Below are positions 2 through 43,692 of a DNA stretch of 64,000 bases, one piece after another. The stretch lies in IMG/VR virus record IMGVR_UViG_3300027816_000051, positions 124,001-188,000 of that record; one strand, written 5' to 3'. How positions within the stretch are numbered: position 1 is the stretch's first letter; each line of letters starts with the position of its first letter. Below the pieces are notes generated by a model. It saw only the letters and a list, made by a program, of their open reading frames with translations. It was not told the origin of the DNA and did not search any database. The translations under genes and the position numbers were made by a program.

Positions 2-367
2 TACCCAGCAAGTGGTACAATTGAGATATGTTCATGTAGTATTCCAAGTGTATTAGGTCCTTATGGTGGGGAGATAACGTATGATGGTGCTTGTGGTGAT
101 TGTTTGTGTACAGACTTTTTTGTTGATATTAATGATTTAACAGCCTCAGATGATAATCAAGTATACTTTGCATACCAATGTTGTGATGGTACATTCACAA
201 CACAAGGTTATAACGCCCCTGGTAATTATAGCGTTTGTCTTATGAGAGTGACAAATGTGTTTATATTGTTTAGAGGAAACTTCGTACCACCAATATATAC
301 TTCGCAATATACATACGGTACTGGTTGTGGTGATTATTGTAACACATTTTGTGGAGAAGCATGTTAA
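2..367 (+). CDS. 5'-truncated Cys-rich putative virion protein (C-terminal part)
   Basis: Frame is open from base 2 (YPASGTIEICSCSIPS...) through the listed 104..367 ORF; carries the YQCCDG module like those in downstream genes. Confidence 0.75.
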   Translation, partial: YPASGTIEICSCSIPSVLGPYGGEITYDGACGDCLCTDFFVDINDLTASDDNQVYFAYQCCDGTFTTQGYNAPGNYSVCLMRVTNVFILFRGNFVPPIYTSQYTYGTGCGDYCNTFCGEAC

Positions 368-411
368 TGATAAAATAATGATTTAAGTATTTATAGAAAG
401 AATAGTAATAA

Positions 412-2976
412 ATGCCAGCACAAATAATAACATTTCAAAATTGTTTAGACCCAGCGTCATACTATGATTTTGTCGTCGATGACAGTTTAGTATTATCGGG
501 TGACACGATTTTTGCTGATTACCAATGTTGGTCTTCAACAGGAAATGTCGGAGGTGGACCGTCAGGTACGGTTATTTTTAGTGGTTATACAACCTGTGAA
601 CAATGTAACGACGATTTTAATGGGTGGCAATTTGAACATTGCCAAATACCAGGGGCATTTGTTTACTTTGGTTTAAAAAATTCAGAAGTTAATCAGTATT
701 TCCAAAGTACAGGTGCAACAATTTCTTATGATGGTACATGTTACAACTATACAGGAGTTTATGAACAAGGCACTGGTAGCACCACTTACAATTATACTGT
801 TGCACAATTAATTTCTGAAAATGCTCTTTTTACAAATTGTATTGACTGTTTAACACCACCAAGTCCAACTCCTACCCCTACTCCAACACCCACACCAACT
901 TTATGTTACTCAGGTATAACCGATTCACCAAATTGGTATTATACGGACTGTTGTGGTGTATATCATAGTGGTTCATTTTCACCAACATATGTTTGTTACG
1001 ACCCGAGTTACCCATATGCAGGGATATCTTTCAATGGTTTCTGTACTGTAGTTTGTCCGAGTGTGACCCCAACTCCAACACCCACATTAACACAAACTCC
1101 TTCCGAAACTCCTTCCGAAACCCCAACCCCAACAAATACTGTAACTCCAACAAAAACTCCAAGTCTAACTCCGACACCTTCGGTTACACCAACAAATACA
1201 CCCACAAATACACCGTCAAGTACGTTAGGTTCGACACCTTCGGTTACACCAACAAATACACCCACAAATACCCCTTCATTAACACCTTCGGTAACTGTTA
1301 GTGTAACACCCACAGTAACCCCATCACCTTCACTAGTACCTACAGGATGTACTCAATATACATTCTCATTACACCCAATTTATTTTTTAACGCAAGCCGG
1401 ACCTTATAATATTTCGGGAACAACAACAGGAGGAACTATAGTATTAATTGCAACTGGTGTGACAACATCTCAATTATTATCTGGGTATACCGCACTTGTG
1501 TGTTATTCAATAACAACATTTACAGTTCAAAGTACTGGTACGTGTACTAATTCTGTGAATTTTACATTACCTGTACCTATTGTATCTCCAACCCCGACCC
1601 CAACAAAAACCCCAACACCAAGTCCATCCGGTAATCCAGTTGCGACCCCAAGTGTAACACCTACTAATACCGTAACCCCGACCCTGACCCCAACACCATC
1701 AGGTGGTTGTAGTGATTCAGTTAGAAATACTCTTGCCGCAACGAATTCATATTCTGCCGTTGGTAGACAAGGTATGGTTTATTCATCATCAAATAACAAA
1801 GCATACGTTCTAAACGCATCAAGTGTTGTACAATCTTTTGTCCCAAATTCAACAAGTTTAACAAATGAATTTACATGGTCAGGAAGTAGTTTATTATTAG
1901 GATATAACTCAACTAACAACAAATTATACAGTTGGGAATCATCATTTCCTGTTAAAATGTTAATAAGAAATTTAAACACAAACACAACATCGTCAATATC
2001 AATTTCGGGAATAACATCAGGTTTAGGAAAAATTGAATATAATTCTGTTTTAAATAAAATTTATGCATTTAGTCAAACAGGTGGAAATTTTTCAGTTTCA
2101 CAAATTAGTGTCATAGATGGTTCAACAGATACTTTTACAAACCAAATTACAGGTATAACTTTATCAAACCCTGAAGCGACTGTTTACAATCCTAATAATA
2201 ATAAATTATATTTCGCTCAGAGTGGTAGAATATATTCTTGTTCTGGTAATACTATTTCGTTAGATGGTACATCACTACCAATCACCTCAGCAAGTTTAAT
2301 TGCTTTGGATGTGACGAACAATATTATTTATTTAGTTAGTGCGTCTACGGTATACAAAATAGATGTTGCAACAAACACCACACTTACTTTAAATTCAATA
2401 TCGGGAGCAACTTGGATTTTTGGCTCAACAAGGTCTATGATATATAATCCTGATAACGGTAAATTATATATTAGCAGATATTCAACATTGTCAGATGGAT
2501 TCTTAGGTGTTCTAGACCCGACAACAGGTATATTTAGTGAAATTATTGGTGACGGTATTTCTAAACCTTTGTATGTACCGACAAATACAATATATGGTAT
2601 AAATGATAATGCTCTATACGAAATTTGTGGTTCATCCTTGGTAGCGGTTTCCCCAACCCCAACCCCTACTTTAACTAAAACCCCAACCCCAACTAAAACT
2701 CCATCAGTTACACCAACACCTAGTCCGACATATCAAGAATGGAATATGGTTGGATGTACAAATTACTGTAGTGGGGTTGTGTTGTGTTCAGGTTCGTATA
2801 GTGTAACATTATACACATTACCAAATGTGGTCAATATTTATGATTCAGGTGTTACCATCTACACGAATAATAACTTAACAACAACATTTGATGGGTTTTT
2901 TCAAATTGGAAGTGTAATTTATGAAGTAGTTTCTGGTTCGGTAACTACTCAGTATACAATTGGTGATGGATGTTAA
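412..2976 (+). CDS. Modular Cys-rich, Pro/Thr-repeat protein with YVTN/YncE-like beta-propeller; putative tail fibre/receptor-binding or decoration protein
   Basis: (TP)n tracts; repeated YN(S/P)xNNK(L/I)Y propeller blades; YYTDCCG module; TATTTAT at 388-394. Confidence 0.7.
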   Translation: MPAQIITFQNCLDPASYYDFVVDDSLVLSGDTIFADYQCWSSTGNVGGGPSGTVIFSGYTTCEQCNDDFNGWQFEHCQIPGAFVYFGLKNSEVNQYFQSTGATISYDGTCYNYTGVYEQGTGSTTYNYTVAQLISENALFTNCIDCLTPPSPTPTPTPTPTPTLCYSGITDSPNWYYTDCCGVYHSGSFSPTYVCYDPSYPYAGISFNGFCTVVCPSVTPTPTPTLTQTPSETPSETPTPTNTVTPTKTPSLTPTPSVTPTNTPTNTPSSTLGSTPSVTPTNTPTNTPSLTPSVTVSVTPTVTPSPSLVPTGCTQYTFSLHPIYFLTQAGPYNISGTTTGGTIVLIATGVTTSQLLSGYTALVCYSITTFTVQSTGTCTNSVNFTLPVPIVSPTPTPTKTPTPSPSGNPVATPSVTPTNTVTPTLTPTPSGGCSDSVRNTLAATNSYSAVGRQGMVYSSSNNKAYVLNASSVVQSFVPNSTSLTNEFTWSGSSLLLGYNSTNNKLYSWESSFPVKMLIRNLNTNTTSSISISGITSGLGKIEYNSVLNKIYAFSQTGGNFSVSQISVIDGSTDTFTNQITGITLSNPEATVYNPNNNKLYFAQSGRIYSCSGNTISLDGTSLPITSASLIALDVTNNIIYLVSASTVYKIDVATNTTLTLNSISGATWIFGSTRSMIYNPDNGKLYISRYSTLSDGFLGVLDPTTGIFSEIIGDGISKPLYVPTNTIYGINDNALYEICGSSLVAVSPTPTPTLTKTPTPTKTPSVTPTPSPTYQEWNMVGCTNYCSGVVLCSGSYSVTLYTLPNVVNIYDSGVTIYTNNNLTTTFDGFFQIGSVIYEVVSGSVTTQYTIGDGC
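1172..1271 (+). repeat. 40-bp exact direct repeat at 60-bp period in a PT tract
   Basis: 1172-1211 equals 1232-1271. Confidence 0.8.
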
Positions 2977-3039
2977 AATAACTTTACTATAAAATAGGAT
3001 TTTTTATATTTATCAAATATAGAAATCAATAATTAAAAA

Positions 3040-3888
3040 ATGGGATTAAATGTTCGTTTATACAATATAATCAATGATGGTACGTACTCAATTAGATACA
3101 AGTCCGGTGATAGCCCGTATCCTGAAACGAACAATTCAACATTTACACTTTACGCAACAGGTTTAACTCTTACAGCTGTTACAATTACAAACTTAAGTTT
3201 TAATACTCAATATTGGGTTAAAATGACAGACGACACTACAGGTCGTTATATAATTAAAAATATTTACACTCACGATAGTAAAGCGTTTCCTTGTTATGAT
3301 ACACTATGTTTTAGTGTTGAGGTACAGTGTGACCCACCAATAAGTCCAACTCCAACACCTACAGTTACAAGAACCCCAACCCCAACACCTACAGTTACAA
3401 AAACACCAACAGTTACCGCTACACCATCTAAGACACCGAACGCTTCAATTACACCAACCCCTACTCCAACAAAAACTCCTGGTTTATCACCAACCCCAAC
3501 AGTTACCAAGACTCCAACTCCTACTCCAACACAAAACACCCCTTCATCATATTGTTTATGGTACAGTATTGAAACGATAGATGAAAATATACAATATGAA
3601 GTTACTTGGACACTAAAAGATAATTTAGGTAGTGTAACAACCGCCACTTCAAATATCCCAATTACTTTTTATAAGGTTAATAGTTCAGGGGTGGTAATTG
3701 CGGTATACACATCACCACAATGGCAAATATTCATTGGTTCATCACAGGATAGTGGAAATATTACACTCAATCCAAGTGCTGGTGAATACTTAGTTGCACA
3801 AACCGGTTTAAGTGGAACCATAACAGACCCTAACTATTGTGGTATTGCATTTATAGATTGTGATTTAAATCCCGATTATTGTAATTAA
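3040..3888 (+). CDS. FN3-like N-domain, Pro/Thr linker and Cys-containing C-domain; putative virion protein
   Basis: [14 protein letters not shown] resembles the FN3 LxPxTxY strand; TPTP tract. Confidence 0.6.
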
Positions 3889-3913
3889 ACATTGAATTTA
3901 TATTTATGAAATA

Positions 3914-4264
3914 ATGCCGTCATTAGTAACATACTCAGTAACAATATCAAATTTTTCAGGACAAACACCTTGTAACGGGTACTATATCTACACAGGGTTA
4001 ACACATAATATTGATGATGCAAATTATATCAATGGGGTTGAAGTTTTAATTCCAATATCAACGGGATATACGTTTAATATAAGTTTATTGGATAACATAC
4101 CACAAATTTTTGTATTTGTGGAACACTGTGACGGACACATAAACCCTGTACCATCATCGGTACCAAAATTGCAAGGTGGTTATCAATTAGCATTAGTTGA
4201 TTTAAGATGTAGTGATTGTTACTACCCATGTGCATTTAATGTTAATGTTGTTCAAATAACGTAA
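3914..4264 (+). CDS. Small Cys-containing beta-rich putative virion protein
   Basis: YYIYTGLT...IFVFVEHCDG resembles the central module of 4268..7189 (CTVYTGLT...IYVRIDCEG). Confidence 0.6.
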   Translation: MPSLVTYSVTISNFSGQTPCNGYYIYTGLTHNIDDANYINGVEVLIPISTGYTFNISLLDNIPQIFVFVEHCDGHINPVPSSVPKLQGGYQLALVDLRCSDCYYPCAFNVNVVQIT

Positions 4265-4267
4265 TAA

Positions 4268-7189
4268 ATGGCTTGTCAATTATATAACGTCACAATAAGT
4301 TCATTGGATACCGGTAATGCCACCGGTAACACTAACCCTGTTAATAATGGTAAGGTGTATGTTGCTTATTACAACTGTAATGGTGTACTTACAACAACAA
4401 GTTTTTCAAATGGTAGTTATACTATTTGTACCGACATACAAAATGGATTACCTAGTTTATATTATTTTAAAAACGATTCTCCATTAACCGCATCGAATAG
4501 TACTGCAAATGATAGTGGTTCACAATGTCAAGAAACCACTTTTTTTGAAAAATGTTGTGAACAAGGAGGCACTATTTATGAAGTACAAAGTGGATTAAAT
4601 TATATAGTAGGTAGTGTATACACTGACAATACGGATTGTTATATTGCGGTTGCGTCGGGCCCTTCAACCGCAACAGTTGACGACACTGGGACGTGGGTTT
4701 CACAACCAAGTTGTACAGCTGGTGAGTGTCCATCATGTCCTTCACCAACCCCGACACCAACTCCAACAGAAACACCCACAGAAACCCCAACTCCAACAGA
4801 AACACCCACAGAAACCCCAACCCCAACACCTTCAGAAACACCCACAGAAACCCCAACCCCAACTCCAACACTTACTAAAACAGTTACACCCACACCAACT
4901 AACACTGTAACACCAACACTATCCCCCACCCCAACACCAACACCATCAATATGTACGGATTGTGTGTGTAAACAAATCATAAGTGAAGATGGAAATACAA
5001 TTACATATTCATATACTGATTGTTATGGTTTGCTTCAAACTTCCGGAACCATCGCACCTTTTGCTACGGTTTATCAATGTGTATGTTTTGACAATCAAAC
5101 AATTACATTCAGTGACCCAACTAATATAGTTGTGAATCCTAATGGTGGTTGTGAGGACTACCAAAATTGTGACTCACTACCGGTCCCAACACCTACATTA
5201 ACTAGTACTCCGACAGTCACACCTACAGTCACTCCTGAACCAACAAGTTCACCAGCTTCAACTGTATCTGTCACACCAACAGTAACACCAACAGTAACAC
5301 CAACAAGTTCGCCGGTTTCAACTGTATCTGTCACACCAACAGTAACTCCTACAAATACAGTTACACCTACAGTCACAACTTCACCTGGCGGTTCACCTAC
5401 ACCAACCAATACATCAACTCCCACAAATACAGTTACACCTACAGTTACTTCATCACCAGGCGATTCACCTACACCCACACCAACTACCTCACCATCAGTA
5501 ACTCCAACCAATACATCAACCCCTACAAATACAGTTACACCTACAGTTACTTCATCACCAGGAGGTTCGCCCACACCAACTACTTCACCATCGGCAACAC
5601 CCTCTAATACACCAAGTGAAACACCTTCAACAACTCCGTCTTTAACACCGACAGTTACACTTACAGTAACATCAACACCGACTCTAACACCTAGCGTTAC
5701 ACCATCAGTTACATCAACACCTGGTGGTTCGCCAACCCCAACACCCACCAACACCCCAACAAAAACCCCTACACCTACTGTTACACCTTCAGGTTGTGTA
5801 AACGATTTGGTCACCCCAAAAGGCGTTAAGATTTCATTTAATTCCGGTTCTAATTATACAAATTGTACGGTCTATACCGGATTAACTTCAACTAACATAA
5901 CAGGTATAACTTCATGTACAAGTATGTCCACAGGAGATATTTGTGATATTACAGGTATAGACCCAACATTAATGGAGATATATGTTAGAATTGATTGTGA
6001 AGGTTGTTGTGAACAAGTTTTTAGAGTTAATTTGGATGATTGTTGTGATAGTTCGTCGACACCGATATCATCACCCACCCCAACAGTAACACCGACTCAG
6101 AGTGCGACTCCTACGAATACACCAACACTTACCCCAACACCAACTGTTAGTAGTACACCATCAACAGGGTATACTTGTAACGATAGCGTTTATGTCCCCT
6201 CGACAGTGAACGGTGTTTCTATAACATCAACATATAGTGGTAGTGTTACCGAAAATACATCTGGATACACGTCATCCTGTGTTGGTGACACTATTGTAAT
6301 GACCGACTATCATAACTTTTTAGGAAATTCAGGACCTTTCTCATATAGATACAATTTTAGTTCACCAGTAAATGATTTAGTTGTTTTTATAACCGGTATG
6401 GGTGGTACTAGTGATGAAGATTTCACATTTACAACAAATACAGGTACCCCCACAATATCTTCACCGTTAAGTTGTTATGTAACAATAACAGGTAACACAA
6501 TTATTGGTGGCTCAACCGCACCACTTTTTGTCAATGGTGGTGGAAAATTCATAATAACAAATTCAACACCATTTATCTCGATGACCATATCAGGTAATGG
6601 TGGTGCCTCAGGTTCTAGGGTGGGTATTTGCTCCGATTCAATCATACCACTTGTAACACCCACACCCACCAATACTTTAACACCAACACCGACCGTAACC
6701 CCAACGAATACTGTAACACCTACTAATACAGTAACTCCAACAATTACAACATCACCCGGTGGTTCGCCCACATCAACACCAACAATAACACCTACTAATA
6801 CAGTTACACCAACTGAAACTGTAACACCAACACCGACCGTAACCCCAACGAATACTGTAACACCTACTAATACAGTTACACCAACTGAAACTGTAACACC
6901 AACACCGACCGTGACTTCTACCAATACAGTAACACCAACAAATACCCCAACACCAACACTCACCCCAACCAGTTCGGCTACTCCATGTGACATACTATGG
7001 GAATTCGATGGAGGAACGACAGGAACAGGAGGTCATACCACATTTAGTTATACTGACTGTACCGGTACCCTTCAATTTATTACTGTTGGGAATGGTACAA
7101 CTGAGACATACTGTGGTTATTTAACACCAACACCTCAAGTTACGAATGATGGTGACGGTACTTTTACAAGCACTGGAACATGTAATTAA
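4268..7189 (+). CDS. 973-aa mucin-like Pro/Thr/Ser-rich protein with several Cys-rich modules; putative virion fibre
   Basis: Four long PT/TVTP tracts separate YYNCNG, YTDCYG, CEGCC and YTDCTG modules. Confidence 0.7.
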   Translation: MACQLYNVTISSLDTGNATGNTNPVNNGKVYVAYYNCNGVLTTTSFSNGSYTICTDIQNGLPSLYYFKNDSPLTASNSTANDSGSQCQETTFFEKCCEQGGTIYEVQSGLNYIVGSVYTDNTDCYIAVASGPSTATVDDTGTWVSQPSCTAGECPSCPSPTPTPTPTETPTETPTPTETPTETPTPTPSETPTETPTPTPTLTKTVTPTPTNTVTPTLSPTPTPTPSICTDCVCKQIISEDGNTITYSYTDCYGLLQTSGTIAPFATVYQCVCFDNQTITFSDPTNIVVNPNGGCEDYQNCDSLPVPTPTLTSTPTVTPTVTPEPTSSPASTVSVTPTVTPTVTPTSSPVSTVSVTPTVTPTNTVTPTVTTSPGGSPTPTNTSTPTNTVTPTVTSSPGDSPTPTPTTSPSVTPTNTSTPTNTVTPTVTSSPGGSPTPTTSPSATPSNTPSETPSTTPSLTPTVTLTVTSTPTLTPSVTPSVTSTPGGSPTPTPTNTPTKTPTPTVTPSGCVNDLVTPKGVKISFNSGSNYTNCTVYTGLTSTNITGITSCTSMSTGDICDITGIDPTLMEIYVRIDCEGCCEQVFRVNLDDCCDSSSTPISSPTPTVTPTQSATPTNTPTLTPTPTVSSTPSTGYTCNDSVYVPSTVNGVSITSTYSGSVTENTSGYTSSCVGDTIVMTDYHNFLGNSGPFSYRYNFSSPVNDLVVFITGMGGTSDEDFTFTTNTGTPTISSPLSCYVTITGNTIIGGSTAPLFVNGGGKFIITNSTPFISMTISGNGGASGSRVGICSDSIIPLVTPTPTNTLTPTPTVTPTNTVTPTNTVTPTITTSPGGSPTSTPTITPTNTVTPTETVTPTPTVTPTNTVTPTNTVTPTETVTPTPTVTSTNTVTPTNTPTPTLTPTSSATPCDILWEFDGGTTGTGGHTTFSYTDCTGTLQFITVGNGTTETYCGYLTPTPQVTNDGDGTFTSTGTCN
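4761..4820 (+). repeat. Exact 30-bp tandem duplication in a PT tract
   Basis: CTCCAACAGAAACACCCACAGAAACCCCAA x2. Confidence 0.85.
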
Positions 7190-7226: not shown

Positions 7227-9377
7227 ATGAGTTTTTTAAGTAATAATAATTCAGAATTTTTATCAGTTAGAATCACCCAAAAGGGTAGAAATTCTATTGC
7301 AAAAGGTAGTTTTAACATCGCATATTTTCAAATTGGGGATTCTGAATTTGATTACACATCACCGTTTGATAATTTTACAGGATTAAACTCACAACCATTT
7401 CAAATGGTCTTTGCACCCTTTGATAAAGAAGGGGGTGTAAAATATCCCTATAAATTAGATAGTAGTAACACGGGTTCTACGGTTTATGGTATTCCCGTAC
7501 AATCTTCAACCACCGATACTTTAAGAAACGTTATGGGTCCTGCCGGTTTTGTAACCGAGTATATTGATTATGATAGTAGTAATTGTACAGGAACGAGTGT
7601 TGAGTGTGAAACTCAACAAATATCATTATCCGCGATGACAGGTGATAATAGTGTGACCGTATTAACAGGTGCTAGTTTTAATGACTGTGAGTATATTACA
7701 ATAGTTTATGGTGGATTTTGTGGTAATGACCCAAATCATCCTGTAATCACTGGTGAAACAAACAGTTTAACATATAAAATTACAGGTGTAACAGGAAATA
7801 CACTTTATCTTGATAGAGCGACACCTAATTTTTCAGGATGTACAGGTCCCGCTCAAGTGGTATGTAATTCTTGTGAAAATGAATATCCTGTAAGTGTAAC
7901 ATATAATCCAAACTGTAAACCCGCGGAAATTGACCCAACACAACAATTAAATTCATGGACCATGAATGTCGTTTGGGGTATGAAACCAATCGGTTTTGAC
8001 GTTAATGGTGTGGACGAAAACATAACAGGTTTTACATCAAACAAACACGTATCAACTAAACAATTTTTAGGTTATACAACATCAAGTGGTCAAACATTTA
8101 CAACAAGTTCAGGTACCACGGTAACTAACCCCACTTCTTATAAAAATTCATATAATGAAGTGATTGAAGTTACTCCTGAGGAACAAAGATGTATTGCTGT
8201 AATCCATTATTCAGAACTCGGAGATTTAAAAAATGACCCTGAAAGATTCTATAAGTACGACGATTATATAAGCACAAATAATACGGAATCTCAAGCATTG
8301 TTAGAAGACTCAATTGGTAACACGATAACAGATTTAGAATATTTTGAAGTATATATCCCATTTATTCAATACCATAGAAATACTGGTACAACAATAGGTG
8401 CTTTACTTACTATGGACACAACAGATTACTTTGTTAGTTCGAAGAAAAACGCATACCAAAAAATCAAGTACAGATATCTATTAGATGAGATTGGAAATAG
8501 AGTTGGTAAAATTTTCGTAAACAATAAAGTAGTTGTCATTGACGACCAAGAGTTGGTTGCTGTTATGGATTATAAATCTAACAGAAAGTACACACTACCT
8601 TCACCAAAAATAAACTTATTACCAAGTGATTTACCAGCCGCACAATCTTTTTATTCTGGTTCAACTGAACAGACTATATGGTTAACATACATGTTAAACT
8701 ACACGGGTGATACCCAAATGAATGGATTACCTTGTAACTACTATACTAAATTCGAAACAACAACAGGTAGTACCTATTATACAACTCCCTGTCAGTTATA
8801 TGTCAAGTTCGCAAATGGTTATTTCACAGATATGGTAACAGGTAGTACTTGTAATTTTAAAAATGGGTTTATAGCTAATCAGTTCCAATTATTAATTCAA
8901 GTTACCAATTATGGTGATTTACCTGAACCAAATCTTTGGAAATTATTGGATATGACTCAATATATACCAAATCATACTGTTGGTAACACAATTAACCCTG
9001 CGAACTTAGTTGATTATTCATTTCAAGTTACTTTTGACATGTACGATAATGATACTACAATATTTGATTTAGAATCTTATATTGGTGAGATACCAAATCA
9101 ACCATCAACAGCACCACAGTTTGGTGATGAACAACCTTTTCCTGGTAGTATTAAATTGGTAAGAGCAACGGATATTGAGAAAATGAATTTCTTGGTGAAC
9201 TTACCGGCTAGTCAATTTAATGTTACACAAAATCCAACGTATACTACAGGTCAAGATAAGAGAATTACAGAAGTTGCTTTATTGAACGAAAATAAAGAAG
9301 TGTTGGCAATAGGTAAGACCGCCAATCCTGTAAAAAGAAGCGGAACACAAGTATTCGCAATAAAAATAGATTTCTAA
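7227..9377 (+). CDS. Tail-collar/baseplate-associated structural protein (DUF3751-like termini)
   Basis: N-term ITQKGRNSIAKG...FQIGDSE and C-term ITEVALLNENKEVLAIGKTANPVKR...IKIDF are typical of phage tail-collar fibre-like domains. Confidence 0.55.
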   Translation: MSFLSNNNSEFLSVRITQKGRNSIAKGSFNIAYFQIGDSEFDYTSPFDNFTGLNSQPFQMVFAPFDKEGGVKYPYKLDSSNTGSTVYGIPVQSSTTDTLRNVMGPAGFVTEYIDYDSSNCTGTSVECETQQISLSAMTGDNSVTVLTGASFNDCEYITIVYGGFCGNDPNHPVITGETNSLTYKITGVTGNTLYLDRATPNFSGCTGPAQVVCNSCENEYPVSVTYNPNCKPAEIDPTQQLNSWTMNVVWGMKPIGFDVNGVDENITGFTSNKHVSTKQFLGYTTSSGQTFTTSSGTTVTNPTSYKNSYNEVIEVTPEEQRCIAVIHYSELGDLKNDPERFYKYDDYISTNNTESQALLEDSIGNTITDLEYFEVYIPFIQYHRNTGTTIGALLTMDTTDYFVSSKKNAYQKIKYRYLLDEIGNRVGKIFVNNKVVVIDDQELVAVMDYKSNRKYTLPSPKINLLPSDLPAAQSFYSGSTEQTIWLTYMLNYTGDTQMNGLPCNYYTKFETTTGSTYYTTPCQLYVKFANGYFTDMVTGSTCNFKNGFIANQFQLLIQVTNYGDLPEPNLWKLLDMTQYIPNHTVGNTINPANLVDYSFQVTFDMYDNDTTIFDLESYIGEIPNQPSTAPQFGDEQPFPGSIKLVRATDIEKMNFLVNLPASQFNVTQNPTYTTGQDKRITEVALLNENKEVLAIGKTANPVKRSGTQVFAIKIDF

Positions 9378-10153: not shown

Positions 10154-10195
10154 ATGCGGTTTGGTTTTACAATTTTTATTTTGTATATTTTATCT

Positions 10196-29408: not shown

Positions 29409-29409
29409 T

Positions 29410-29703: not shown

Positions 29704-29714
29704 CCCCCTTTTTT
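29690..29714. terminator. Bidirectional intrinsic terminator between convergent operons
   Basis: AAGGGGGT-CAATA-ACCCCCTT with an A run before and a T run after. Confidence 0.8.
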
Positions 29715-30774
29715 ATTTAACTAAACTATTAATCCATTTATAGGTTTTTTCCATTCCATAGAACAGAGGTTCACTAACAACCCAACCTATTTTTTCGTGG
29801 TATAATTTATTGTCTGAATTTCTTCCCCTCACACCAACAGGACATTTATATCCATACTTCTGTTTAAATTCTTCCCCACCAATATTTCTGATATAAATTT
29901 CTTTACCTGAAATATCTATAGCCATTTGAGCCAAATCATTAATTGTTACTTTCTCTTCAGAACCAATGTTTACAGGACCCAAAAAAGAGTCTTGTCTCAT
30001 TAGTCTTAAAACCGCTTCAACACATTCATCCACATATAAGAATGAACGAGTCTGTTGACCATCACCCCAAACTTCAATTTCTCCACCGTCTAACATTTCG
30101 GCAACTTTTCTACACATAGCTGCTGGTGCTTTTTCTTTACCACCTTTCCACGTACCATATGGACCAAATATGTTATGAAATCTAGCAATTCGAACATCCA
30201 AACCGTGATTTCTGTGAAAAGCCAAGTACAACCTTTCCGAAAAAAGTTTTTCCCAACCATATTCTGAATCAGGATTCGCGGGATATGCTGATGATTCTTC
30301 ACAATTTGGGTTGTTAGGGTCTAATTGATTGTGTTCAGGATACATACATGCCGATGATGAATAAAAAATCTTCTTAACTTTTGTCTTCACTGATTCATTT
30401 ACAACATTTAAATTTATCATTGCAGAATTGTGCATAACATTCGCGTCATTTTCACCAGTGAAGATGTAACCAGCACCACCCATATCGGCAGCTAATTGAT
30501 AAACCTCATCAAATGGGACCTCAGTTGAATATGGTTGTTTGTAATAATTAAACGGTAATATCGTACCATTTAATTCTTCTAATCTCATTACTGATGATAC
30601 GTTTTTTGGGTCCGTAAGGTCATATATTAAGAATTCGTCACAAAAGTCTTTCTCATCAAAATATTCGTGTCTTTTTATATCAACTACTCTTACGTAGTTT
30701 CCTTCATTTTTTAATCTTTTTGCTAGGTGACCACCAATAAATCCGCCACCACCCAATACTAATACTCGTTTCAT
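29713..30774 (-). CDS. NAD-dependent epimerase, GDP-mannose 3,5-epimerase-like
   Basis: GGGGFIG, QLAADMGGAGYI, SSACMYPE, YGWEK, KAPAAMCRK, VRGRNSDN. Confidence 0.85.
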   Translation of the reverse strand: MKRVLVLGGGGFIGGHLAKRLKNEGNYVRVVDIKRHEYFDEKDFCDEFLIYDLTDPKNVSSVMRLEELNGTILPFNYYKQPYSTEVPFDEVYQLAADMGGAGYIFTGENDANVMHNSAMINLNVVNESVKTKVKKIFYSSSACMYPEHNQLDPNNPNCEESSAYPANPDSEYGWEKLFSERLYLAFHRNHGLDVRIARFHNIFGPYGTWKGGKEKAPAAMCRKVAEMLDGGEIEVWGDGQQTRSFLYVDECVEAVLRLMRQDSFLGPVNIGSEEKVTINDLAQMAIDISGKEIYIRNIGGEEFKQKYGYKCPVGVRGRNSDNKLYHEKIGWVVSEPLFYGMEKTYKWINSLVK

Positions 30775-31388
30775 TTTATTTTTTTAAAAAATCCCTCACC
30801 AAAATTATTACCCCACCAAAATTGTTCAACACAGGTAAACCCATGATGTGTCATCCAATTGTTTATTTCATCAAAGTGTGGACAACCTTTATATAATTCG
30901 GCTCTGTTTATTTCTACAATAACGTAGTCAATGTTGATTAATGTATTCACGGAACCTTTGAGAACCTCTAATTCAAAACCTTGAACATCGATATTCATCA
31001 TGTTGTATTTTGAAAAATCGTAATTTAAATCATCCAATCTATCCATTTCAACTTCTTCTACAGAATCAAAAACGATATGAGGAAATTGAACAGAATGTAA
31101 TTTCGGTTCTAATATTGAGGATGACATACCTTTATTAAAGGATTCTACAAACATAGAAACTTTTCTCTTTTCATTACCTAACGCCAGTTTAACTAAAATT
31201 GCGTCATCATCTATTTTTTCTTTTAAGGTCTCAAAATTAGACGATAGAGGTTCAAAGTATATTCTGTTTGAAATACCCAATTCCTTATAAACTTCATCTT
31301 CTTGACCAAAATGTGCACCAACGTGAATCACACCATGGATATTAACATTATGATTAATCATAAATGTCTTTAGCTCTATATTATTCAT
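30771..31388 (-). CDS. FkbM-family methyltransferase
   Basis: IHVGAHFG, YFEP, IDVQGFELEVLKG. Confidence 0.85.
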   Translation of the reverse strand: MNNIELKTFMINHNVNIHGVIHVGAHFGQEDEVYKELGISNRIYFEPLSSNFETLKEKIDDDAILVKLALGNEKRKVSMFVESFNKGMSSSILEPKLHSVQFPHIVFDSVEEVEMDRLDDLNYDFSKYNMMNIDVQGFELEVLKGSVNTLINIDYVIVEINRAELYKGCPHFDEINNWMTHHGFTCVEQFWWGNNFGEGFFKKIK

Positions 31389-32182
31389 TCTCTATCCTCT
31401 TTATATTTGTCTTTATTATACAATAAATCCCTGTGTTTTTCAAGTATTTTTGCTGCGTTTACGTAAACTAAATTATTATGTAATGATTGATTTTTTTGTC
31501 TAGTGGTCCCCCATCCAGGTTCGGAAATATAATCTATCGTATATAAACCTGACACTTTTCCGAGTTCTTTGAATGCTCTCATGGACATATCCATATCATC
31601 ATAATTTTGGGGTGAAAAATATTCGTCTAAAAAATTTAATTTGACCACGTCATTATAGTTGTACATTAGTGGACCTCTGTTACCATATTCTCTAGCATAA
31701 AAAATATCTCTTGATGAGTTATCTTTATGTGCAATATCGATGTAATTTATTTGTTTTGTTTGTTCATTATAGATGTTATTGTGAGCAACAAAAGATGTTA
31801 CAGCGAACACATCACTATATTTTATGAACGGTTCCAACATCCTCTTATCAAAATCTTTTTCTGTGACAACCATATCATCTTGGATTAAGACCACATAATC
31901 ATTTATAACAGACTTTAGACCAATATTATTTGCTTTGGTTTCAAAAACATTGTCGGCATACAGGTAATCAATTTTTTTATTACTAACTCTCTTTAAATTG
32001 TCACGAACAATACCTTCACTATTATCTGTACAACCATCAAAAACTATTACAATCTGGTCATTCAGTTCTGATAAATTATTTACCAAGTTACTCACCACTT
32101 GGTTCATTAAGAATTCCTTGTTGTGAATTGTCAATACTACTGATGTTTTCATTTTAAAAGATATTTTGATAATTCTATACAA
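31385..32182 (-). CDS. GT2 (GT-A) glycosyltransferase
   Basis: SVVLTIHN, FDGCTD, LIQDD, YDDMDMSMR. Confidence 0.8.
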   Translation of the reverse strand: MYRIIKISFKMKTSVVLTIHNKEFLMNQVVSNLVNNLSELNDQIVIVFDGCTDNSEGIVRDNLKRVSNKKIDYLYADNVFETKANNIGLKSVINDYVVLIQDDMVVTEKDFDKRMLEPFIKYSDVFAVTSFVAHNNIYNEQTKQINYIDIAHKDNSSRDIFYAREYGNRGPLMYNYNDVVKLNFLDEYFSPQNYDDMDMSMRAFKELGKVSGLYTIDYISEPGWGTTRQKNQSLHNNLVYVNAAKILEKHRDLLYNKDKYKEDRE

Positions 32183-32910
32183 TCACCTTTTCTATCAAAC
32201 AGGTGGTCAACATAATTATACGTTTCAATCACGTTATAATTTTCTTTGTGAAAAATCCAATTATTTGCCGTTTGCTCACAACAATGATAAATCTTCGAGT
32301 CTGTATCAGTCACATCTGAAATGTCTACCGATATCATATCTTCCATAATTTTTTTTGCTTGGTGAATATTGTAATCCGCGGGCAACCCAAAAATACCTAA
32401 ATTATAAATTTTAAAATCTAAATCATTTGTAACCTGTTTACATATTTTTATTTCACCCCATCTCGGGTCACCATTCCTAACGATTCTTTCATACTTCCAA
32501 ACCATAATAGAATTATCATCAATTTGTGGTAATTCCGAATGAAAAAATAAATCATTATCGATTTTTACAGTGTACTCAGTTTCTGATTTTGCATAATTAA
32601 TAAAATCATTTAAAACTGTAAAACTATAATTAAGACTTTCATTGTATTTGGTAAGTTGTTCCGTGTAATCAATATAAATAATTCTGTCTTGGTCAATGTT
32701 ATACTTGTTCATTTTTTCTTTCATACCCTCAACATCATCAGTATAAAGATGTAAAATACTTTTTCTATTCTTATCAATAAATGAAGCATAAGATGCTGAT
32801 GAATAATCAGATATAAACTCTTTATTTTTGTAGACATCAAACGCCCATTTCCGACCGATTTGGGACATTTTATTTAAGTCATAATTATAATTTAATGCAA
32901 TAAATTTCAT
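32149..32910 (-). CDS. Putative GT-A-like transferase
   Basis: LHLYTD, VKIDND (DxD), NLGIF, CEQ; operon context. Confidence 0.5.
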   Translation of the reverse strand: MKFIALNYNYDLNKMSQIGRKWAFDVYKNKEFISDYSSASYASFIDKNRKSILHLYTDDVEGMKEKMNKYNIDQDRIIYIDYTEQLTKYNESLNYSFTVLNDFINYAKSETEYTVKIDNDLFFHSELPQIDDNSIMVWKYERIVRNGDPRWGEIKICKQVTNDLDFKIYNLGIFGLPADYNIHQAKKIMEDMISVDISDVTDTDSKIYHCCEQTANNWIFHKENYNVIETYNYVDHLFDRKGDCIELSKYLLK

Positions 32911-33581
32911 GGTATATATACGTTGTATTTTATTCTATAATCGAGACAATAATCAAATTTTAAATTATGTTTCACAACCAAGTTAGTTAATATACTTTGG
33001 TCATTTCTATGGAATTGCCAATTTGGAAAATTCTCACCAATTTGATTTGGTTCATTGTCAACTATCTGTTTAATACTACAATACTTAAAATAATCGTGAA
33101 CAAATTCCATCATTTGTTTGGTTTTTTTAATGATGATAAATCCTGCTTCCATCTGTGGTGTTTCATGAAACTTTTCTTCATCACAATCCATCAAGATAAA
33201 ACAGTCTCTTTTTGTACATATTTTTTGAGGCCAACGATTTCCATTCCAATTTGTAAAATAATAATCATTATCTTTCAAATAATTTGCAATCGTATTATAA
33301 TCAACATCAACTAAATCACCGGCATCGGTATAAATTAATGCATCCCCATCTTCTAATTCATTCAAAATATCTAAAATAATTTTTGGTTTCCACAACCAAA
33401 ATCCATCACCCGTTTCACAATCTAATATTTCTTTATGGTTTTCATAAAAAATACCTTTCTTAACATCTTCAGATTTAAATCCTCGGATATCATTGAAACC
33501 ACGTGAATTATAATATCCGATTAATTTTTGAACGGTGTTACTAAATTTATTGTTGGTGTAAAAAGATAGAACAATTTTCAT
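32907..33581 (-). CDS. Putative glycosyltransferase (GT-A-like)
   Basis: FWLWKP, IYTDAG, HRNDQSIL. Confidence 0.55.
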   Translation of the reverse strand: MKIVLSFYTNNKFSNTVQKLIGYYNSRGFNDIRGFKSEDVKKGIFYENHKEILDCETGDGFWLWKPKIILDILNELEDGDALIYTDAGDLVDVDYNTIANYLKDNDYYFTNWNGNRWPQKICTKRDCFILMDCDEEKFHETPQMEAGFIIIKKTKQMMEFVHDYFKYCSIKQIVDNEPNQIGENFPNWQFHRNDQSILTNLVVKHNLKFDYCLDYRIKYNVYIP

Positions 33582-33583
33582 TA

Positions 33584-34285
33584 TTAATGTATCCCCCGAA
33601 CATTTACGTTTATTTCATATTCATTTATTAATGGAGAGAGTTCATTAGGGTATTCAGATAAATTCCATTTACCTCTAACTAAAGCCGTTGCTATATATGG
33701 ATAAACAGAACTATCAAAATGATTCAACCCCCTTTTGTTTTCACCATCGTAATGATATAAACCTTTGATGTTGTTTTCTATCATAAAATTTCTATATGTT
33801 TCATTCTCTAACCACATATTATTTTTGGTACCTTTCATGATTTTAATGTAATCATCTTTTTTCCAAATAGTTGGTTGCATAGAAAATATATCTTTATTGT
33901 CGGATTCTATTTCATATAAGGTCTCATAAATTTTTTTATCTTTAACAGACCCCGATTTTAACAATCTAATGAACGAATATTCTTGGTTATCATGTAAAAA
34001 ATCGAGGTAATTAAAAATTTTATCATGACTGACATTGTTATAAAGAATAAAGTCTTCTTGTAAGTATATAAAATAGTCATATGGTATTGAAGATAAACAC
34101 TTTAACCATGATTCATAATAAGGTTCTTGATTTTCATATAAAAAACAAATTTGCTCGGGTATCATTACATCTGTAATAAAATACATCGGTAAGTTTGTGT
34201 ACTTTTTTTGTTCTAACAAGAACATATCCAAAATATCTGAACATTTTGAATTTGTATAAGTAACGTAACAAATTTTATTATCCAT
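33584..34285 (-). CDS. Putative glycosyltransferase (GT-A-like)
   Basis: YLQEDF, FSMQPTIW; operon context. Confidence 0.5.
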   Translation of the reverse strand: MDNKICYVTYTNSKCSDILDMFLLEQKKYTNLPMYFITDVMIPEQICFLYENQEPYYESWLKCLSSIPYDYFIYLQEDFILYNNVSHDKIFNYLDFLHDNQEYSFIRLLKSGSVKDKKIYETLYEIESDNKDIFSMQPTIWKKDDYIKIMKGTKNNMWLENETYRNFMIENNIKGLYHYDGENKRGLNHFDSSVYPYIATALVRGKWNLSEYPNELSPLINEYEINVNVRGIH

Positions 34286-35012
34286 AAGGTGTTAAATTTT
34301 TGTTGATATAAACCACATCCATTTCTGTGTTTGAAGATTCTGGCGACTCGTCTATTGGTATAAACCTATTTAGTTTTTCATCTAGTTCAGATTTACTTGT
34401 AGAACCACGATATAATTCCTGTAACCCTACTTCGGTGGTTATTATTTTTACATCATTTAAATATTCTTTTAGAGAGTCTAATACGATATTTTCTGCACCT
34501 TGAACATCCATCCAAATCAAATCAACACTTTTAATATCATTTTCTTTTAACCAATCACTAAGAACAATACAGTCAACCTCAGTTTCCTTTTGGGCCCACT
34601 GAGATGAACGCCAGTGGTTTGTTGTCTGTAATAAAGAACTGGCACCCACATTTCCATTATAAACTTCGTAAAATTTAGTTTTACCGTTGTAATTGTTTAT
34701 TGCGTATTGGTAAACTTTTATGTTATTAATTTTCTCAACGTTCTTAACTGTAAATTCGTAGTTTTCTTTTACTGGTTCAAACGCATATATTTTAGCATGT
34801 GGAAACCATCTATTTAACTCTAAACTTTGGCAACCATCTCTTGACCCAATATCTAATATTGTGTTGACATCATTAAAGTCAATTTTATCTTTTATAACAT
34901 TAATCATTTTTGTTGTCCATAATGGACATCTACCATTCAAATCGGTAAAGGCACCCCTATTTAATTCATCTTGAGTAAATGCGTCGTCAATAAATTTTGA
35001 ATTATCTATCAT
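34278..35012 (-). CDS. FkbM-family methyltransferase
   Basis: LDIGSRDG, YAFEP, WMDVQGAE. Confidence 0.85.
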   Translation of the reverse strand: MIDNSKFIDDAFTQDELNRGAFTDLNGRCPLWTTKMINVIKDKIDFNDVNTILDIGSRDGCQSLELNRWFPHAKIYAFEPVKENYEFTVKNVEKINNIKVYQYAINNYNGKTKFYEVYNGNVGASSLLQTTNHWRSSQWAQKETEVDCIVLSDWLKENDIKSVDLIWMDVQGAENIVLDSLKEYLNDVKIITTEVGLQELYRGSTSKSELDEKLNRFIPIDESPESSNTEMDVVYINKNLTPYG

Positions 35013-35023
35013 TTTTATAATTT

Positions 35024-35614
35024 TTAAATCACCACCATACTATAACATGGTGCGTCTTTATATGTGGACAAATTAATATTTCGTTTTAACCAAAAAATTT
35101 CATTATCATTACTTAATTCGCCACCCATAAAGTTTATATTTTTATAGTTAAGTGATATTATATTTTCCGTGATTATTTTTTCCGAATACTCATCGTGTAT
35201 GGTAGATACATTCCAAATATCAAACACCGTATCTATTTCACCCTCCACAAAATAATCAACAAAATATTTTCCTTCATTATGCCAAGTCAAAAAATTTACA
35301 CACTCTTTTTTAAATGTGGAAACTAATCTATTTGCATTAGATGGTAGTAAATCACTTCTCCATTTAAGGACTCTGTTGTAACCTATTTCTTTGGCTTTCA
35401 TTATTCCATTCAAAGTTGATATTTTTTGTAGTGCTATATTTTGTACACCCCTATCGTGTGGAATACTGTTGAATAAGACAACATCATTAGTATCGTATTT
35501 TGATTCTTCACCTTGCCATGTTGACCAAATCAAATCATAACCAGTCCAAGCGTTTTTTAATTCTTTAACGTAGTCTGAAGGTCCTTGTACTATGACACAA
35601 AAATCATTATTCAT
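35024..35614 (-). CDS. WavE-like glycan biosynthesis protein
   Basis: VIVQGP, QKISTLNG, LKWRSD pattern. Confidence 0.45.
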   Translation of the reverse strand: MNNDFCVIVQGPSDYVKELKNAWTGYDLIWSTWQGEESKYDTNDVVLFNSIPHDRGVQNIALQKISTLNGIMKAKEIGYNRVLKWRSDLLPSNANRLVSTFKKECVNFLTWHNEGKYFVDYFVEGEIDTVFDIWNVSTIHDEYSEKIITENIISLNYKNINFMGGELSNDNEIFWLKRNINLSTYKDAPCYSMVVI

Positions 35615-35620
35615 ACTGAA

Positions 35621-39587: not shown

Positions 39588-39588
39588 T

Positions 39589-42334: not shown

Positions 42335-42421
42335 GATTTTAAGTTTTTTTATAAATATTTTGGTTTATTGTTTTTTATTCGTTATCTTTTGTAATAATAA
42401 TAAATAGAAAACAATTTGTCA

Positions 42422-43270: not shown

Positions 43271-43272
43271 AA

Positions 43273-43641: not shown

Positions 43642-43654
43642 ATTTTTATAAATA

Positions 43655-43686
43655 TTTGACTTTATCATATTTGTTTACTATATTTT
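43655..43686 (+). promoter_or_regulatory. Early promoter TTTG-N20-TATATTTT (TTGACT-N17-TATATT)
   Basis: Overlaps the divergent reverse TATTTAT motif at 43648-43654. Confidence 0.6.
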
Positions 43687-43692
43687 AATATC

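What the first reader, a model, noticed from the sequence alone, without database searches (positions are those of the whole stretch)
2..7189. Array of shuffled Cys-rich modules on Pro/Thr stalks
Five consecutive genes reuse short Cys modules (YQCCDG, YYTDCCG, YYNCNG, YTDCYG, YTDCTG) and a YTGLT...C beta module, separated by PT linkers, like beads on a string. Such Cys density is unusual for proteins made in a reducing bacterial cytoplasm. It implies metal binding, or disulfides forming after lysis. There are no signal peptides, so these are not host-secreted adhesins.
Basis: partly seen in the sequence, partly recalled or inferred. Interest (0 to 1): 0.65.

Follow-up and report, generated by a model that had tools for sequence, protein, structure and literature searches.

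The report
Cys-module fibre genes of a jumbo phage
An uncultured freshwater jumbo phage carries, right after its baseplate genes, a fast-evolving set of genes that string three new kinds of small cysteine-braced domains on proline/threonine stalks, one stalk being about 4,700 residues long. They are most likely long, possibly sugar-coated, host-catching fibres.

Summary
The motif h-x-[YF]-x-x-C-x-G occurs 7 times in the 155.7-kb contig, and all 7 are in these genes. Cys makes up 5.4% of the array's folded domains against 1.08% elsewhere.

Three corrections apply:
- "Gene 1" (window 2-367) is only the tail of a 5,472-aa ORF that starts 16 kb upstream. Its residues 66-4810 are a (Pro/Asn/Val)-Thr dipeptide stalk.
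- There are three module families. t2 has the pattern C...C...CxxC and is a small beta-barrel plus helix (pLDDT 84). t3 is the YTGLT module.
- The record is a contractile-tailed jumbo phage of about 290 kb. The array sits between baseplate-region genes and a conserved 716-aa gene.

Relatives keep the array in the same place but reshuffle the modules and the stalk lengths. pN/pS is 0.27-0.64 in the array against 0.04-0.07 in the flanking gene. No module matches Pfam, NCBIfam, an annotated PHROG or the PDB. The t1 module is found in only 89 of 1.84 billion protein clusters, and every genomic context examined was phage.

A 15-gene glycan-synthesis cluster lies 22 kb downstream, and similar enzymes adjoin distant t1 proteins.

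Best reading: a hypervariable adhesin or tail-fibre cassette, probably braced by disulfides and possibly O-glycosylated. Presence in the virion, the state of the Cys and glycosylation are all untested.

The parts
2..367 (+). 3' end (last 121 codons plus stop) of gA. gA is a 5,472-aa ORF that starts at contig 43073, which is 16 kb upstream of the window. Its layout is a 65-aa N-terminal domain, a 4,745-aa (P/N/V)-Thr stalk, three t2 modules and two t1 modules.
   Evidence: The spacing to gF is identical (23,951 bp) in 4 assemblies, counting this one.
101..352 (+). t1 module (gA aa 5385-5468, motif YQCCDG). The preceding t1 copy ends at window 106.
   Evidence: i-E 1.4e-10 with the relatives-only HMM
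412..2976 (+). gB, 854 aa. Layout: t2, t2, PT linker, weak t1, PT linker, partial t3-like piece, PT linker, 315-aa repeat-rich domain, PT linker, 83-aa C-terminal domain.
427..861 (+). Two tandem t2 modules (427-615 and 625-861) with the Cys pattern C...C...CxxC.
   Evidence: i-E 8e-14 and 5e-14. AF2 model of the first copy: pLDDT 84.
886..1059 (+). Short t1-like module (YYTDCCG), a weak member of the family.
   Evidence: 18 bits; not recovered
1702..2646 (+). 315-aa domain with recurring NNKLY-like repeats. It looks propeller-like by eye only. No family match.
   Evidence: The same domain sits in different array genes in relatives.
3040..3888 (+). gC, 282 aa. Layout: t3 module (3064-3330), PT linker, 115-aa C-terminal domain.
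   Evidence: i-E 5e-29
3914..4264 (+). gD, 116 aa. A stand-alone t3 (YTGLT) module and the most conserved gene of the array.
   Evidence: 33 clusters, all hypothetical proteins
4268..7189 (+). gE, 973 aa. Layout: t1 (4268-4528), t2 (4538-4729), PT linker, t1 (4961-5170), PT linker, t3 (5804-6046), PT linker, unknown domain (6161-6649), PT linker, t1 (6980-7186).
   Evidence: AF2 model of aa 1-87: pLDDT 94.8.
7227..9377 (+). gF, 716 aa. A conserved gene with no PT linker that always follows the array in relatives. Function unknown.
   Evidence: pN/pS 0.04-0.07
29713..41822 (-). 15-gene glycan-synthesis cluster and candidate modifier of the Thr-rich stalks. It encodes an NAD epimerase/dehydratase, two FkbM methyltransferases, at least four GT2-type glycosyltransferases, a weak GT-D-like protein and a UDP-GlcNAc 2-epimerase.
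   Evidence: GT2 genes are present in relatives. Giant GT/FkbM enzymes adjoin distant t1 proteins.

Best explanation
The locus is the hypervariable distal-fibre or adhesin cassette of an uncultured freshwater jumbo myophage. The genome is about 290 kb and may belong to the 'moraphages'.

Five co-transcribed genes encode strings of small beta-rich domains from three previously unnamed families (t1, t2, t3), plus a few larger domains. Extended Pro/Thr stalks join the domains. One protein, gA, has a 65-aa N-terminal domain, a 4,745-residue (Pro/Asn/Val)-Thr stalk that would reach roughly 1.4 um if extended, and five Cys modules at its far end.

Inferred mechanism:
- The proteins are made in the cytoplasm without signal peptides.
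- They attach to the baseplate or tail-fibre apparatus encoded just upstream.
- The terminal modules bind host-surface structures, probably glycans, while the stalks widen the capture radius.
- The four conserved Cys of each t1 and t2 module most likely form two intradomain disulfides once the particle meets oxic water. These would brace tiny exposed domains.
- The Thr-rich stalks are probably O-glycosylated by the phage's own glycan cluster, which would make them mucin-like.
- Host range is retuned by shuffling modules among the genes and by changing stalk length.

Shown here: the genes, the module families, the predicted folds, the synteny, the hypervariability and the glycan genes.
Inferred only: virion attachment, binding function, disulfides and glycosylation.
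For: Phage tail context:
- The contig encodes a tail sheath (3e-59), tail tube and baseplate hub, and gp25-like and Baseplate_J-like proteins. Six unknown large ORFs follow, then the array.
- In a 52%-identity relative, the ORF homologous to the one just upstream of gA is fused at residue ~1005 to PT-linked modules.
- A distant t1 protein lies near a Peptidase_S74 fibre gene.
- The order 1386-aa ORF, array, gF-sized ORF (727 aa), 201-aa ORF at the resolvase position, primase recurs in a distant relative; only the primase is matched (faintly) to a family, the rest by size and order.

Real, selected coding sequence:
- Thr fills 97% of alternate stalk positions while its codons are mixed.
- The 5,472-aa ORF is intact, with identical spacing, in four assemblies (G000, the window's own, and G001, G002, G004).

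Hypervariability:
- Relatives whose gF is 69-96% identical have different gene lengths and module orders.
- The gA orthologue is 2,940 aa in a relative whose gF is 96% identical.
- pN/pS is 0.27-0.64 in the array against 0.04-0.07 in gF.

Modules and folds:
- The t1 model has pLDDT 94.8 and the t2 model 84.
- The ESM-Atlas shapes nearest to t1 are almost all phage proteins, from clusters carrying crAss_MUZ_C, collagen-fibre, Phage_tail_2 and SprB domains, at TM 0.58-0.66.
- 25 of the 30 t1 proteins of at least 300 aa found elsewhere also have P/T/S linkers.

Cys:
- Each module has four conserved Cys. t1 has no CxxC knuckle.

Glycosylation:
- The window holds a 15-gene glycan cluster.
- Multi-domain GT/FkbM enzymes lie immediately beside t1/PT proteins in two other contigs.
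- GT2 genes occur in all sufficiently large related records.
Against: - No array protein, and neither immediate neighbour (the 1,414-aa ORF and gF), matches any known fibre, RBP, CBM or Ig family in Pfam, PHROGs, NCBIfam or PDB sequences. Virion membership therefore rests on synteny alone.
- RNR genes and other non-structural genes (contig ~18-27 kb) separate the sheath, tube and hub genes from the gp25/J wedge genes; the array lies downstream of the wedge genes.
- Cys parity is mixed. 25 of 53 t1 modules have an odd count, so not every Cys can sit in an intradomain disulfide.
- No sulfhydryl oxidase was found, although the control for that search was silent. The thioredoxin and glutaredoxin genes present are reductants, and are probably there for the phage's RNR.
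- The glycan cluster lies 22 kb away on the other strand. It could equally serve host-surface or DNA modification.
- Structure matches to the PDB are weak (best Z 4.6 and 4.3).
Confidence: 0.55

Rival explanations
1. The Cys modules are metal-binding domains, each using its four Cys to bind Zn, rather than disulfide-braced domains. They would fold in the reducing cytoplasm around a structural Zn ion, and that is what stabilises the small domains.
For: Both t1 and t2 have exactly four conserved Cys. t2 has a CxxC that lies in the modelled C-terminal helix. In one t2 subtype the CxxC is replaced by a CxxxxC, a perfectly anticorrelated swap that keeps the count at four. The proteins are made in the cytoplasm with no export signal.
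Against: t1 has no CxxC or CxxH knuckle. Its four Cys are spread over 85 residues, at the first strand, the loop after the second strand, the fourth strand and the last residue, which is more like disulfide staples in a sandwich. No His or Asp is co-conserved. Extra Cys come and go freely.
Confidence: 0.25
2. The proteins are not tail-attached host adhesins. They could instead be capsid or other virion decoration fibres that bind particles or mucus-like matrices. Or they could be non-virion products released at lysis, acting as decoys or matrix-forming glycoproteins.
For: There is no homology to any fibre or RBP anchor domain. The stalk would be far longer than any phage tail. Phage Ig-like decoration domains are known to bind weakly to carbohydrates (general knowledge).
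Against: The array sits directly after the baseplate-wedge and large unknown ORFs. A relative fuses PT modules onto the conserved upstream ORF. A Peptidase_S74 fibre gene neighbours a distant t1 protein. The RBP-like elevated pN/pS and the module shuffling also point to host binding.
Confidence: 0.2
3. The glycan cluster has nothing to do with the stalks. It would remodel the host envelope or polysaccharide, or modify phage DNA, and the PT stalks would be bare flexible linkers.
For: The cluster lies 22 kb from the array on the opposite strand. GT2 and FkbM enzymes and UDP-GlcNAc 2-epimerase are typical of O-antigen or capsule pathways. The moraphage paper lists DNA glucosylation and serotype conversion as possible roles for phage glycosyltransferases (PMC12619734).
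Against: Giant GT/FkbM fusion enzymes lie immediately beside t1/PT proteins in two unrelated contigs. The phage encodes more than 5,000 Thr in stalk context. Virion glycosylation by phage-encoded glycosyltransferases is known in mycobacteriophages (cited in PMC12619734).
Confidence: 0.4
4. The ORFs are artefacts. They would be non-coding low-complexity DNA or a misassembled repeat that happens to stay open.
For: The DNA is repetitive. Mirror ORFs of 100-218 aa are open on the opposite strand. One assembly (G003) has a 253-bp deletion that truncates gA to 4,267 aa.
Against: Four assemblies (G000, the window's own, and G001, G002, G004) give the identical 23,951-bp spacing, and the contig itself carries the intact ORF. 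All 12 near-identical viral contigs found (gF 100% identical) give the same four downstream genes. The repeats are only 64-89% identical at the DNA level. Thr is kept at 97% of alternate positions through mixed codons. pN/pS is below 1. The modules fold with high confidence.
Confidence: 0.03

Closest known systems
Modular phage tail-fibre and receptor-binding-protein loci (T4 gp37/38-type, Peptidase_S74 fibres)
   Same: The position after the baseplate genes, the many co-oriented genes, domain shuffling between relatives, and faster protein evolution than in the flanking genes.
   Different: There is no sequence or profile match to any fibre or RBP family. The architecture is small monomer-like domains on disordered PT stalks, not trimeric coiled or beta-helical shafts. 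Trimerisation was not examined. The stalk reaches 4,745 aa.
O-glycosylated Pro/Thr linkers joining carbohydrate-binding modules in bacterial glycoside hydrolases, and mucin-like domains generally
   Same: Pro/Thr-rich extended linkers separating small beta-sandwich modules. Thr density like that of mucins.
   Different: These linkers are encoded by a phage, have no signal peptide, and join no catalytic domain. The register is a strict x-Thr dipeptide (97%) and the length is 10-100 times that of enzyme linkers. The Pfam scan gave no PT-repeat or CBM hit.
Virus-encoded virion glycosylation: mycobacteriophage capsid and tail-tube glycans (Freeman et al. 2023, as cited in PMC12619734); mimivirus fibril glycosylation (own knowledge)
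   Same: The virus carries its own glycosyltransferase and sugar-nucleotide genes together with Ser/Thr-rich surface proteins.
   Different: Glycosylation is not demonstrated here. The cluster is not adjacent to the array in this genome. The putative substrate is a dedicated giant stalk protein rather than a short C-terminal tail on a capsid or tube protein.
Ig-like, FN3 and C2-like beta-sandwich decoration domains on phage structural proteins
   Same: t1 models as a seven-strand, largely beta domain, and the t3 sequence looks FN3-like. The Atlas shapes nearest to t1 are almost all phage proteins (crAss_MUZ_C, Phage_tail_2, collagen-fibre, He_PIG).
   Different: No Pfam Ig or FN3 match. The PDB matches are only generic (Z at most 4.6). 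Four conserved Cys per module are unusual for phage Ig-like domains.
'Moraphages', aquatic jumbo phages of predicted Bacteroidota hosts (PMC12619734)
   Same: An aquatic metagenomic jumbo phage (a related record is 288 kb and 92% complete), a glutamine-synthetase gene, several glycosyltransferases and a contractile tail.
   Different: No DnaK. No phylogenetic placement was done. The paper does not mention PT stalks, Cys modules or a giant ORF: 'threonine' and 'cysteine' each gave 0 hits.

Membership tests
Phage tail fibre / receptor-binding protein | Encoded within or next to the tail and baseplate gene module | tested here: met
   Sheath, tube, hub, gp25-like and Baseplate_J-like genes lie upstream on the same strand. 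The synteny is conserved in relatives.
Phage tail fibre / receptor-binding protein | Homology to a known fibre, spike or RBP domain | tested here: not met
   No hit in Pfam, NCBIfam, PDB sequences or GenBank phages. The only PHROG hits are phrog_15511, on the linkers, and a weak one to phrog_38031 (E 0.0038), both of unknown function.
Phage tail fibre / receptor-binding protein | Physical presence on the virion and a role in adsorption | not testable with these tools
   Needs virion mass spectrometry, EM and adsorption assays.
Phage tail fibre / receptor-binding protein | Hypervariable, mosaic evolution relative to the flanking genes | tested here: met
   Module orders and gene lengths differ between relatives. 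pN/pS is 0.27-0.64 against 0.04-0.07.
Zinc-ribbon / zinc-knuckle domains | Two CxxC(H) knuckles supplying four ligands | tested here: not met
   t1 has no conserved knuckle (a CxC N-terminal start occurs in 62% of copies). t2 has a single CxxC plus two isolated Cys. A four-Cys Zn site is still not excluded.
Cystine-knot / knottin mini-proteins | Six conserved Cys forming a knotted three-disulfide core in about 30-50 aa | tested here: not met
   Four conserved Cys in beta-rich domains of 63-87 aa.
Carbohydrate-binding modules / lectins | Sequence or clear structural match to a CBM or lectin family | tested here: inconclusive
   No sequence match. The t1 model aligns to the PA-IIL lectin at Z 4.4, tied with C2 domains at Z 4.6. 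These values are below a meaningful level.
Mucin-like O-glycosylated stalk | Long Pro/Thr/Ser-rich tracts of low complexity | tested here: met
   The gA stalk is 4,745 aa with 48.5% Thr and 21% Pro. The linkers in gB, gC and gE are 16-195 aa.
Mucin-like O-glycosylated stalk | Dense O-glycans on the Thr/Ser | not testable with these tools
   Only indirect evidence: the phage glycan cluster and GT/FkbM enzymes beside distant t1 proteins.
Moraphages (PMC12619734) | Aquatic jumbo phage over 200 kb encoding glycosyltransferase core genes and often glutamine synthetase | tested here: met
   A related record is 288,260 bp and 92% complete.
Moraphages (PMC12619734) | Placement inside the moraphage clade in marker-gene trees | not tested

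The most novel reading that the evidence does not exclude
A bacteriophage builds a micron-scale, mucin-like 'fishing line'. A single 5,472-aa protein carries a 4,745-residue x-Thr stalk that the phage's own 15-gene glycan pathway O-glycosylates in the host cytoplasm. The stalk is tipped with disulfide-braced domains of two folds that have no solved relatives, and the phage uses it to snare hosts from far beyond the reach of its tail. This would be a phage counterpart of glycosylated giant-virus fibrils and of eukaryotic mucins.
Probability: 0.25. Interest if true: 0.85.

Novelty: new variant of a known kind. Interest (0 to 1): 0.62.

Why it matters
Host recognition is the least understood part of uncultured jumbo phages. 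This locus supplies several things:
- Three sequence-defined, well-modelled domain families that current databases do not name.
- A clear case of module shuffling and stalk-length change as a route to new specificity.
- One of the longest low-complexity stalks I know of in a phage (own knowledge; not surveyed).
- A testable link between phage-encoded glycan synthesis and a dedicated Thr-rich substrate.

If the stalks are glycosylated and the modules are disulfide-braced, that would show that phages can make mucin-like, oxidatively matured surface appendages without any secretion pathway. The small stable modules could also serve as binding scaffolds.

Tried and rejected
Searches that gave nothing useful:
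- Pfam, PHROGs and NCBIfam on all array proteins and single domains. The only hits were to PHROGs of unknown function: phrog_15511 on the linkers and a weak one to phrog_38031.
- megablast and tblastn against 50,697 GenBank phages: no match.
- Word-index protein search of gE 1-155: none. The same search with the t2 profile gave 3 short hits.
- PDB sequence searches with the 1,414-aa ORF, gF, and the t1 and t2 profiles: none.
- Foldseek against the PDB for both models, and against BFVD for t1: nothing at E <= 0.001.
- VIA-align wide search: best Z 4.3 for t2 and 4.6 for t1, which are generic small-barrel and sandwich matches.
- Atlas feature search of gF returned only viral hypothetical proteins. 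For the 1,414-aa ORF it returned nothing.
- gF in 185,579 prokaryote genomes: none, so no host clue.
- tRNA scans of the window and of loci covering the rest of the contig: none found.
- Four literature searches found no earlier description.

Tests that were inconclusive or negative:
- Erv1/ALR sulfhydryl oxidase: not found, but the control genomes were silent too, so this is uninformative.
- DnaK: absent.
- Cys parity and covariation tests did not settle disulfide against metal.

Only genetic code 11 was used.

Rejected ideas:
- A host-secreted adhesin, because there is no signal peptide and the context is a phage.
- A knottin or zinc-ribbon identity, because the Cys patterns do not fit.


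Full report
WHAT THE WINDOW IS. The window is bases 59125-123124 of a 155,713-bp IMG/VR virus record with about 31% GC, estimated to be about 50% complete. Near-identical records reach 288 kb at 92% completeness. The contig encodes a tail sheath (PHROG E 3e-59), a tail tube and a baseplate hub, and a gp25-like wedge protein and a Baseplate_J-like protein. It is therefore a jumbo contractile-tailed phage. Its size, aquatic origin, glutamine-synthetase gene and many glycosyltransferases resemble the recently named 'moraphages', whose predicted hosts are Bacteroidota (PMC12619734). I did not test clade membership, and no DnaK was found.

OBSERVATION. The five co-oriented ORFs exist as described, with gaps of 3-63 nt. 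The quoted motifs are all present. The generalised motif h-x-[YF]-x-x-C-x-G occurs seven times among the contig's ORFs of at least 150 aa. All seven are in gA, gB or gE, and none is in the other 34,705 aa. Cys is 5.4% of the array's folded parts against 1.08% elsewhere. None of the proteins has a signal-peptide-like or membrane-spanning segment.

THE MAIN CORRECTION. 'Gene 1' (window 2-367) is the last 121 codons of a 5,472-aa ORF, gA, at contig 43073-59491.
- Residues 66-4810 are a stalk with 48.5% Thr, 21% Pro, 16% Asn and 9% Val.
- Thr fills 97% of alternate positions, so the stalk is a (P/N/V)-Thr dipeptide polymer.
- The underlying DNA repeats are only 64-89% identical, and Thr is encoded by a mix of ACT, ACC and ACA. 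Selection therefore acts on the protein, not on a DNA repeat.
- Three further near-identical assemblies show exactly the same 23,951-bp spacing from the gA start region to gF as this contig. A fourth has a 253-bp deletion inside the repeat that frameshifts gA.
- A relative whose gF is 96% identical has an intact orthologue of 2,940 aa.
- If extended at about 0.3 nm per residue, the stalk would span roughly 1.4 um. This length is an inference.

MODULES. Pairwise BLAST between the domains is weak, but alignments and iterated HMMs define three families.
Strong copies are in gA (two) and gE (three). Weak copies are in gB and at the gA N-terminus.
There are three copies in gA, two in gB and one in gE.
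- t3 is the YTGLT module. It forms the gC N-terminus, all of gD, and gE 513-593. A partial copy is in gB.

HMMs built from relatives only hit just the array ORFs (gA-gE) among 746 six-frame ORFs of the contig, apart from one marginal t3 hit. They gave 0, 0 and 1 hits on 1,700 composition-matched shuffles.

FOLDS.
- t2 (gB 6-68) models at pLDDT 84 as five strands and a C-terminal helix that carries the CxxC, which I read as a small barrel-like sheet.
- Neither model has a convincing solved relative. Foldseek against the PDB gave nothing at E <= 0.001, the best Z values were 4.6 and 4.3, and the profiles found nothing in PDB sequences.
- The ESM-Atlas shapes nearest to t1 are almost all phage proteins. 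They come from clusters carrying crAss_MUZ_C, collagen-repeat fibres, Phage_tail_2, SprB and He_PIG domains, at TM 0.58-0.66. This is a lead that t1 is a surface domain typical of phages.

DISTRIBUTION.
- The t1 profile found only 89 clusters at E <= 1e-3 among 1.84 billion representatives.
- Of the 30 hits of at least 300 aa, 25 also carry P/T/S linkers, and some also carry t2 or t3.
- Every context I examined was a phage. One t1 protein is followed by a 701-aa ORF at the gF position. One contig repeats the gene order 1386-aa ORF, array, gF-sized 727-aa ORF, 201-aa ORF at the resolvase position, primase (sizes and order; only the primase has a faint family match). One t1 protein lies beside a Peptidase_S74 fibre gene.
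- gD has 33 related clusters, all annotated as hypothetical.
- Nothing related was found in GenBank phages or in prokaryote genomes.

HYPERVARIABILITY.
- All 12 near-identical viral contigs found (gF 100% identical) keep the same four downstream genes.
- Relatives with 52-96% gF identity keep the array between the same flanking genes, but the gene lengths differ. The gE position, for example, holds 405, 763, 821, 973, 1,303 or 1,872 aa.
- Modules also change order and move between genes, including the 315-aa gB domain.
- At similar synonymous divergence, pN/pS is 0.04-0.07 for gF, 0.27-0.30 for gD, 0.45 for gB 1-148 and 0.64 for gE 1-155. The Cys are retained.
- In the most distant relative, the ORF homologous to the 1,414-aa gene just upstream of gA (52% identity over about 1,000 aa) continues directly into PT-linked modules. 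This fusion suggests that such module strings hang from that conserved protein.

CYS CHEMISTRY. This is unresolved.
- Four conserved Cys per module fit either two disulfides or one Zn site.
- t1 lacks any knuckle. Its Cys sit at the first strand, the loop after strand 2, strand 4 and the C-terminal residue, which looks like staples.
- t2 has one CxxC on a helix facing the sheet. A subtype moves one of those Cys five residues downstream and still keeps four.
- Many t1 copies add a fifth Cys through a CxC start. That Cys could be free, could link modules, or could pair with a Cys outside my module boundaries.
- The phage encodes a thioredoxin and a glutaredoxin (window 29133-29601). These are probably there for its RNR.
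- No Erv1-type oxidase was detected, but the control for that search was silent.
- I favour disulfides that form after release into oxic water, at about 0.5.

GLYCAN LINK.
- Window 29713-41822 (minus strand) is a 15-gene cluster. It encodes an NAD epimerase/dehydratase, a UDP-GlcNAc 2-epimerase (4e-60), two FkbM methyltransferases, at least four GT2-type transferases and a weak GT-D-like protein.
- GT2 genes occur in every related record large enough to judge.
- In two other contigs, a t1/PT protein sits head-to-head with a giant multi-domain GT/FkbM enzyme.
- Together with more than 2,000 stalk Thr, this makes phage-directed O-glycosylation of the stalks a reasonable hypothesis, at about 0.4. 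Host-envelope or DNA modification remain open alternatives.

VERDICT.
- The best reading is a hypervariable fibre or adhesin cassette of a jumbo myophage, built from three unnamed domain families on PT stalks and including one giant stalk protein.
- It is a new variant of a known kind, namely modular phage host-recognition loci.
- Virion location, binding targets, Cys state and glycosylation all need experiments.

Noticed in passing
contig G000:C1:43073-59491 (L011:3073-19491); only the last 366 nt are in window 2-367: A giant 5,472-aa ORF, of which 4,745 aa are a strict (Pro/Asn/Val)-Thr dipeptide stalk. The orthologue in a close relative (gF 96% identical) is 2,940 aa, so stalk length changes quickly in evolution.
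   Followed up: yes
window 29713-41822 (-): A 15-gene glycan-synthesis cluster: an epimerase/dehydratase, a UDP-GlcNAc 2-epimerase, two FkbM methyltransferases, several GT2-type enzymes, and several ORFs with no family hit.
   Followed up: partly
window 29133-29387 and 29422-29601 (+): Adjacent thioredoxin (2e-24) and glutaredoxin (2e-9) genes. The contig also carries RNR-like ORFs at about 24.0-27.4 kb, identified by eye from their N-termini only.
   Followed up: partly
window 26838-27728 (+), 42416-43270 (+), 44255-45379 (+): A Dam-like D12 DNA methyltransferase, an N6/N4 DNA methylase, and a glutamine-synthetase-like gene. The last is a trait reported for 'moraphages'.
   Followed up: no
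window 1008-1313, 3294-3647, 4639-4980, 5158-5814, 6475-6993 (-): Open 'GVGV...' frames of 100-218 aa on the opposite strand. They are mirror images of the PT-linker codons and are almost certainly not genes.
   Followed up: partly
L047 (G003:C1:53800-70500), at gA nt ~12,741: One near-identical assembly has a 253-bp deletion inside the stalk repeat that frameshifts gA to 4,267 aa. I could not tell whether this is a repeat-collapse artefact or a real variant.
   Followed up: partly
L031:1216-6903: In the most distant relative (gF 52% identical; 335,630-bp record rated 100% complete), the homologue of the 1,414-aa upstream ORF is a 1,895-aa fusion. From about residue 1005 it continues into PT linkers and small domains.
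   Followed up: yes
L037:1937-5521 and L040:3304-8321: Giant multi-domain enzymes of 1,194 and 1,450 aa (FkbM or Methyltransf_23, GT1/GT4, GT9, Gly_transf_sug) lie directly beside t1/PT-linker proteins, in divergent orientation, in two unrelated metagenomic contigs.
   Followed up: partly
window 9416-10024 and 10154-11134 (+): A RuvC-like resolvase and a DnaG-type primase follow gF. A similar gene order by size and position (array, 727-aa ORF, 201-aa ORF, primase; only the primase has a faint family match) recurs in a distant contig (L050).
   Followed up: partly
P0029 and P0059 (hits): P0029 has five t1-like stretches joined by short Pro-rich spacers (by eye) rather than PT stalks. P0059 is a 10-fold tandem repeat that matches only the YxYTDCDG core and is probably an unrelated repeat family. 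The stricter local HMM did not recover either.
   Followed up: no
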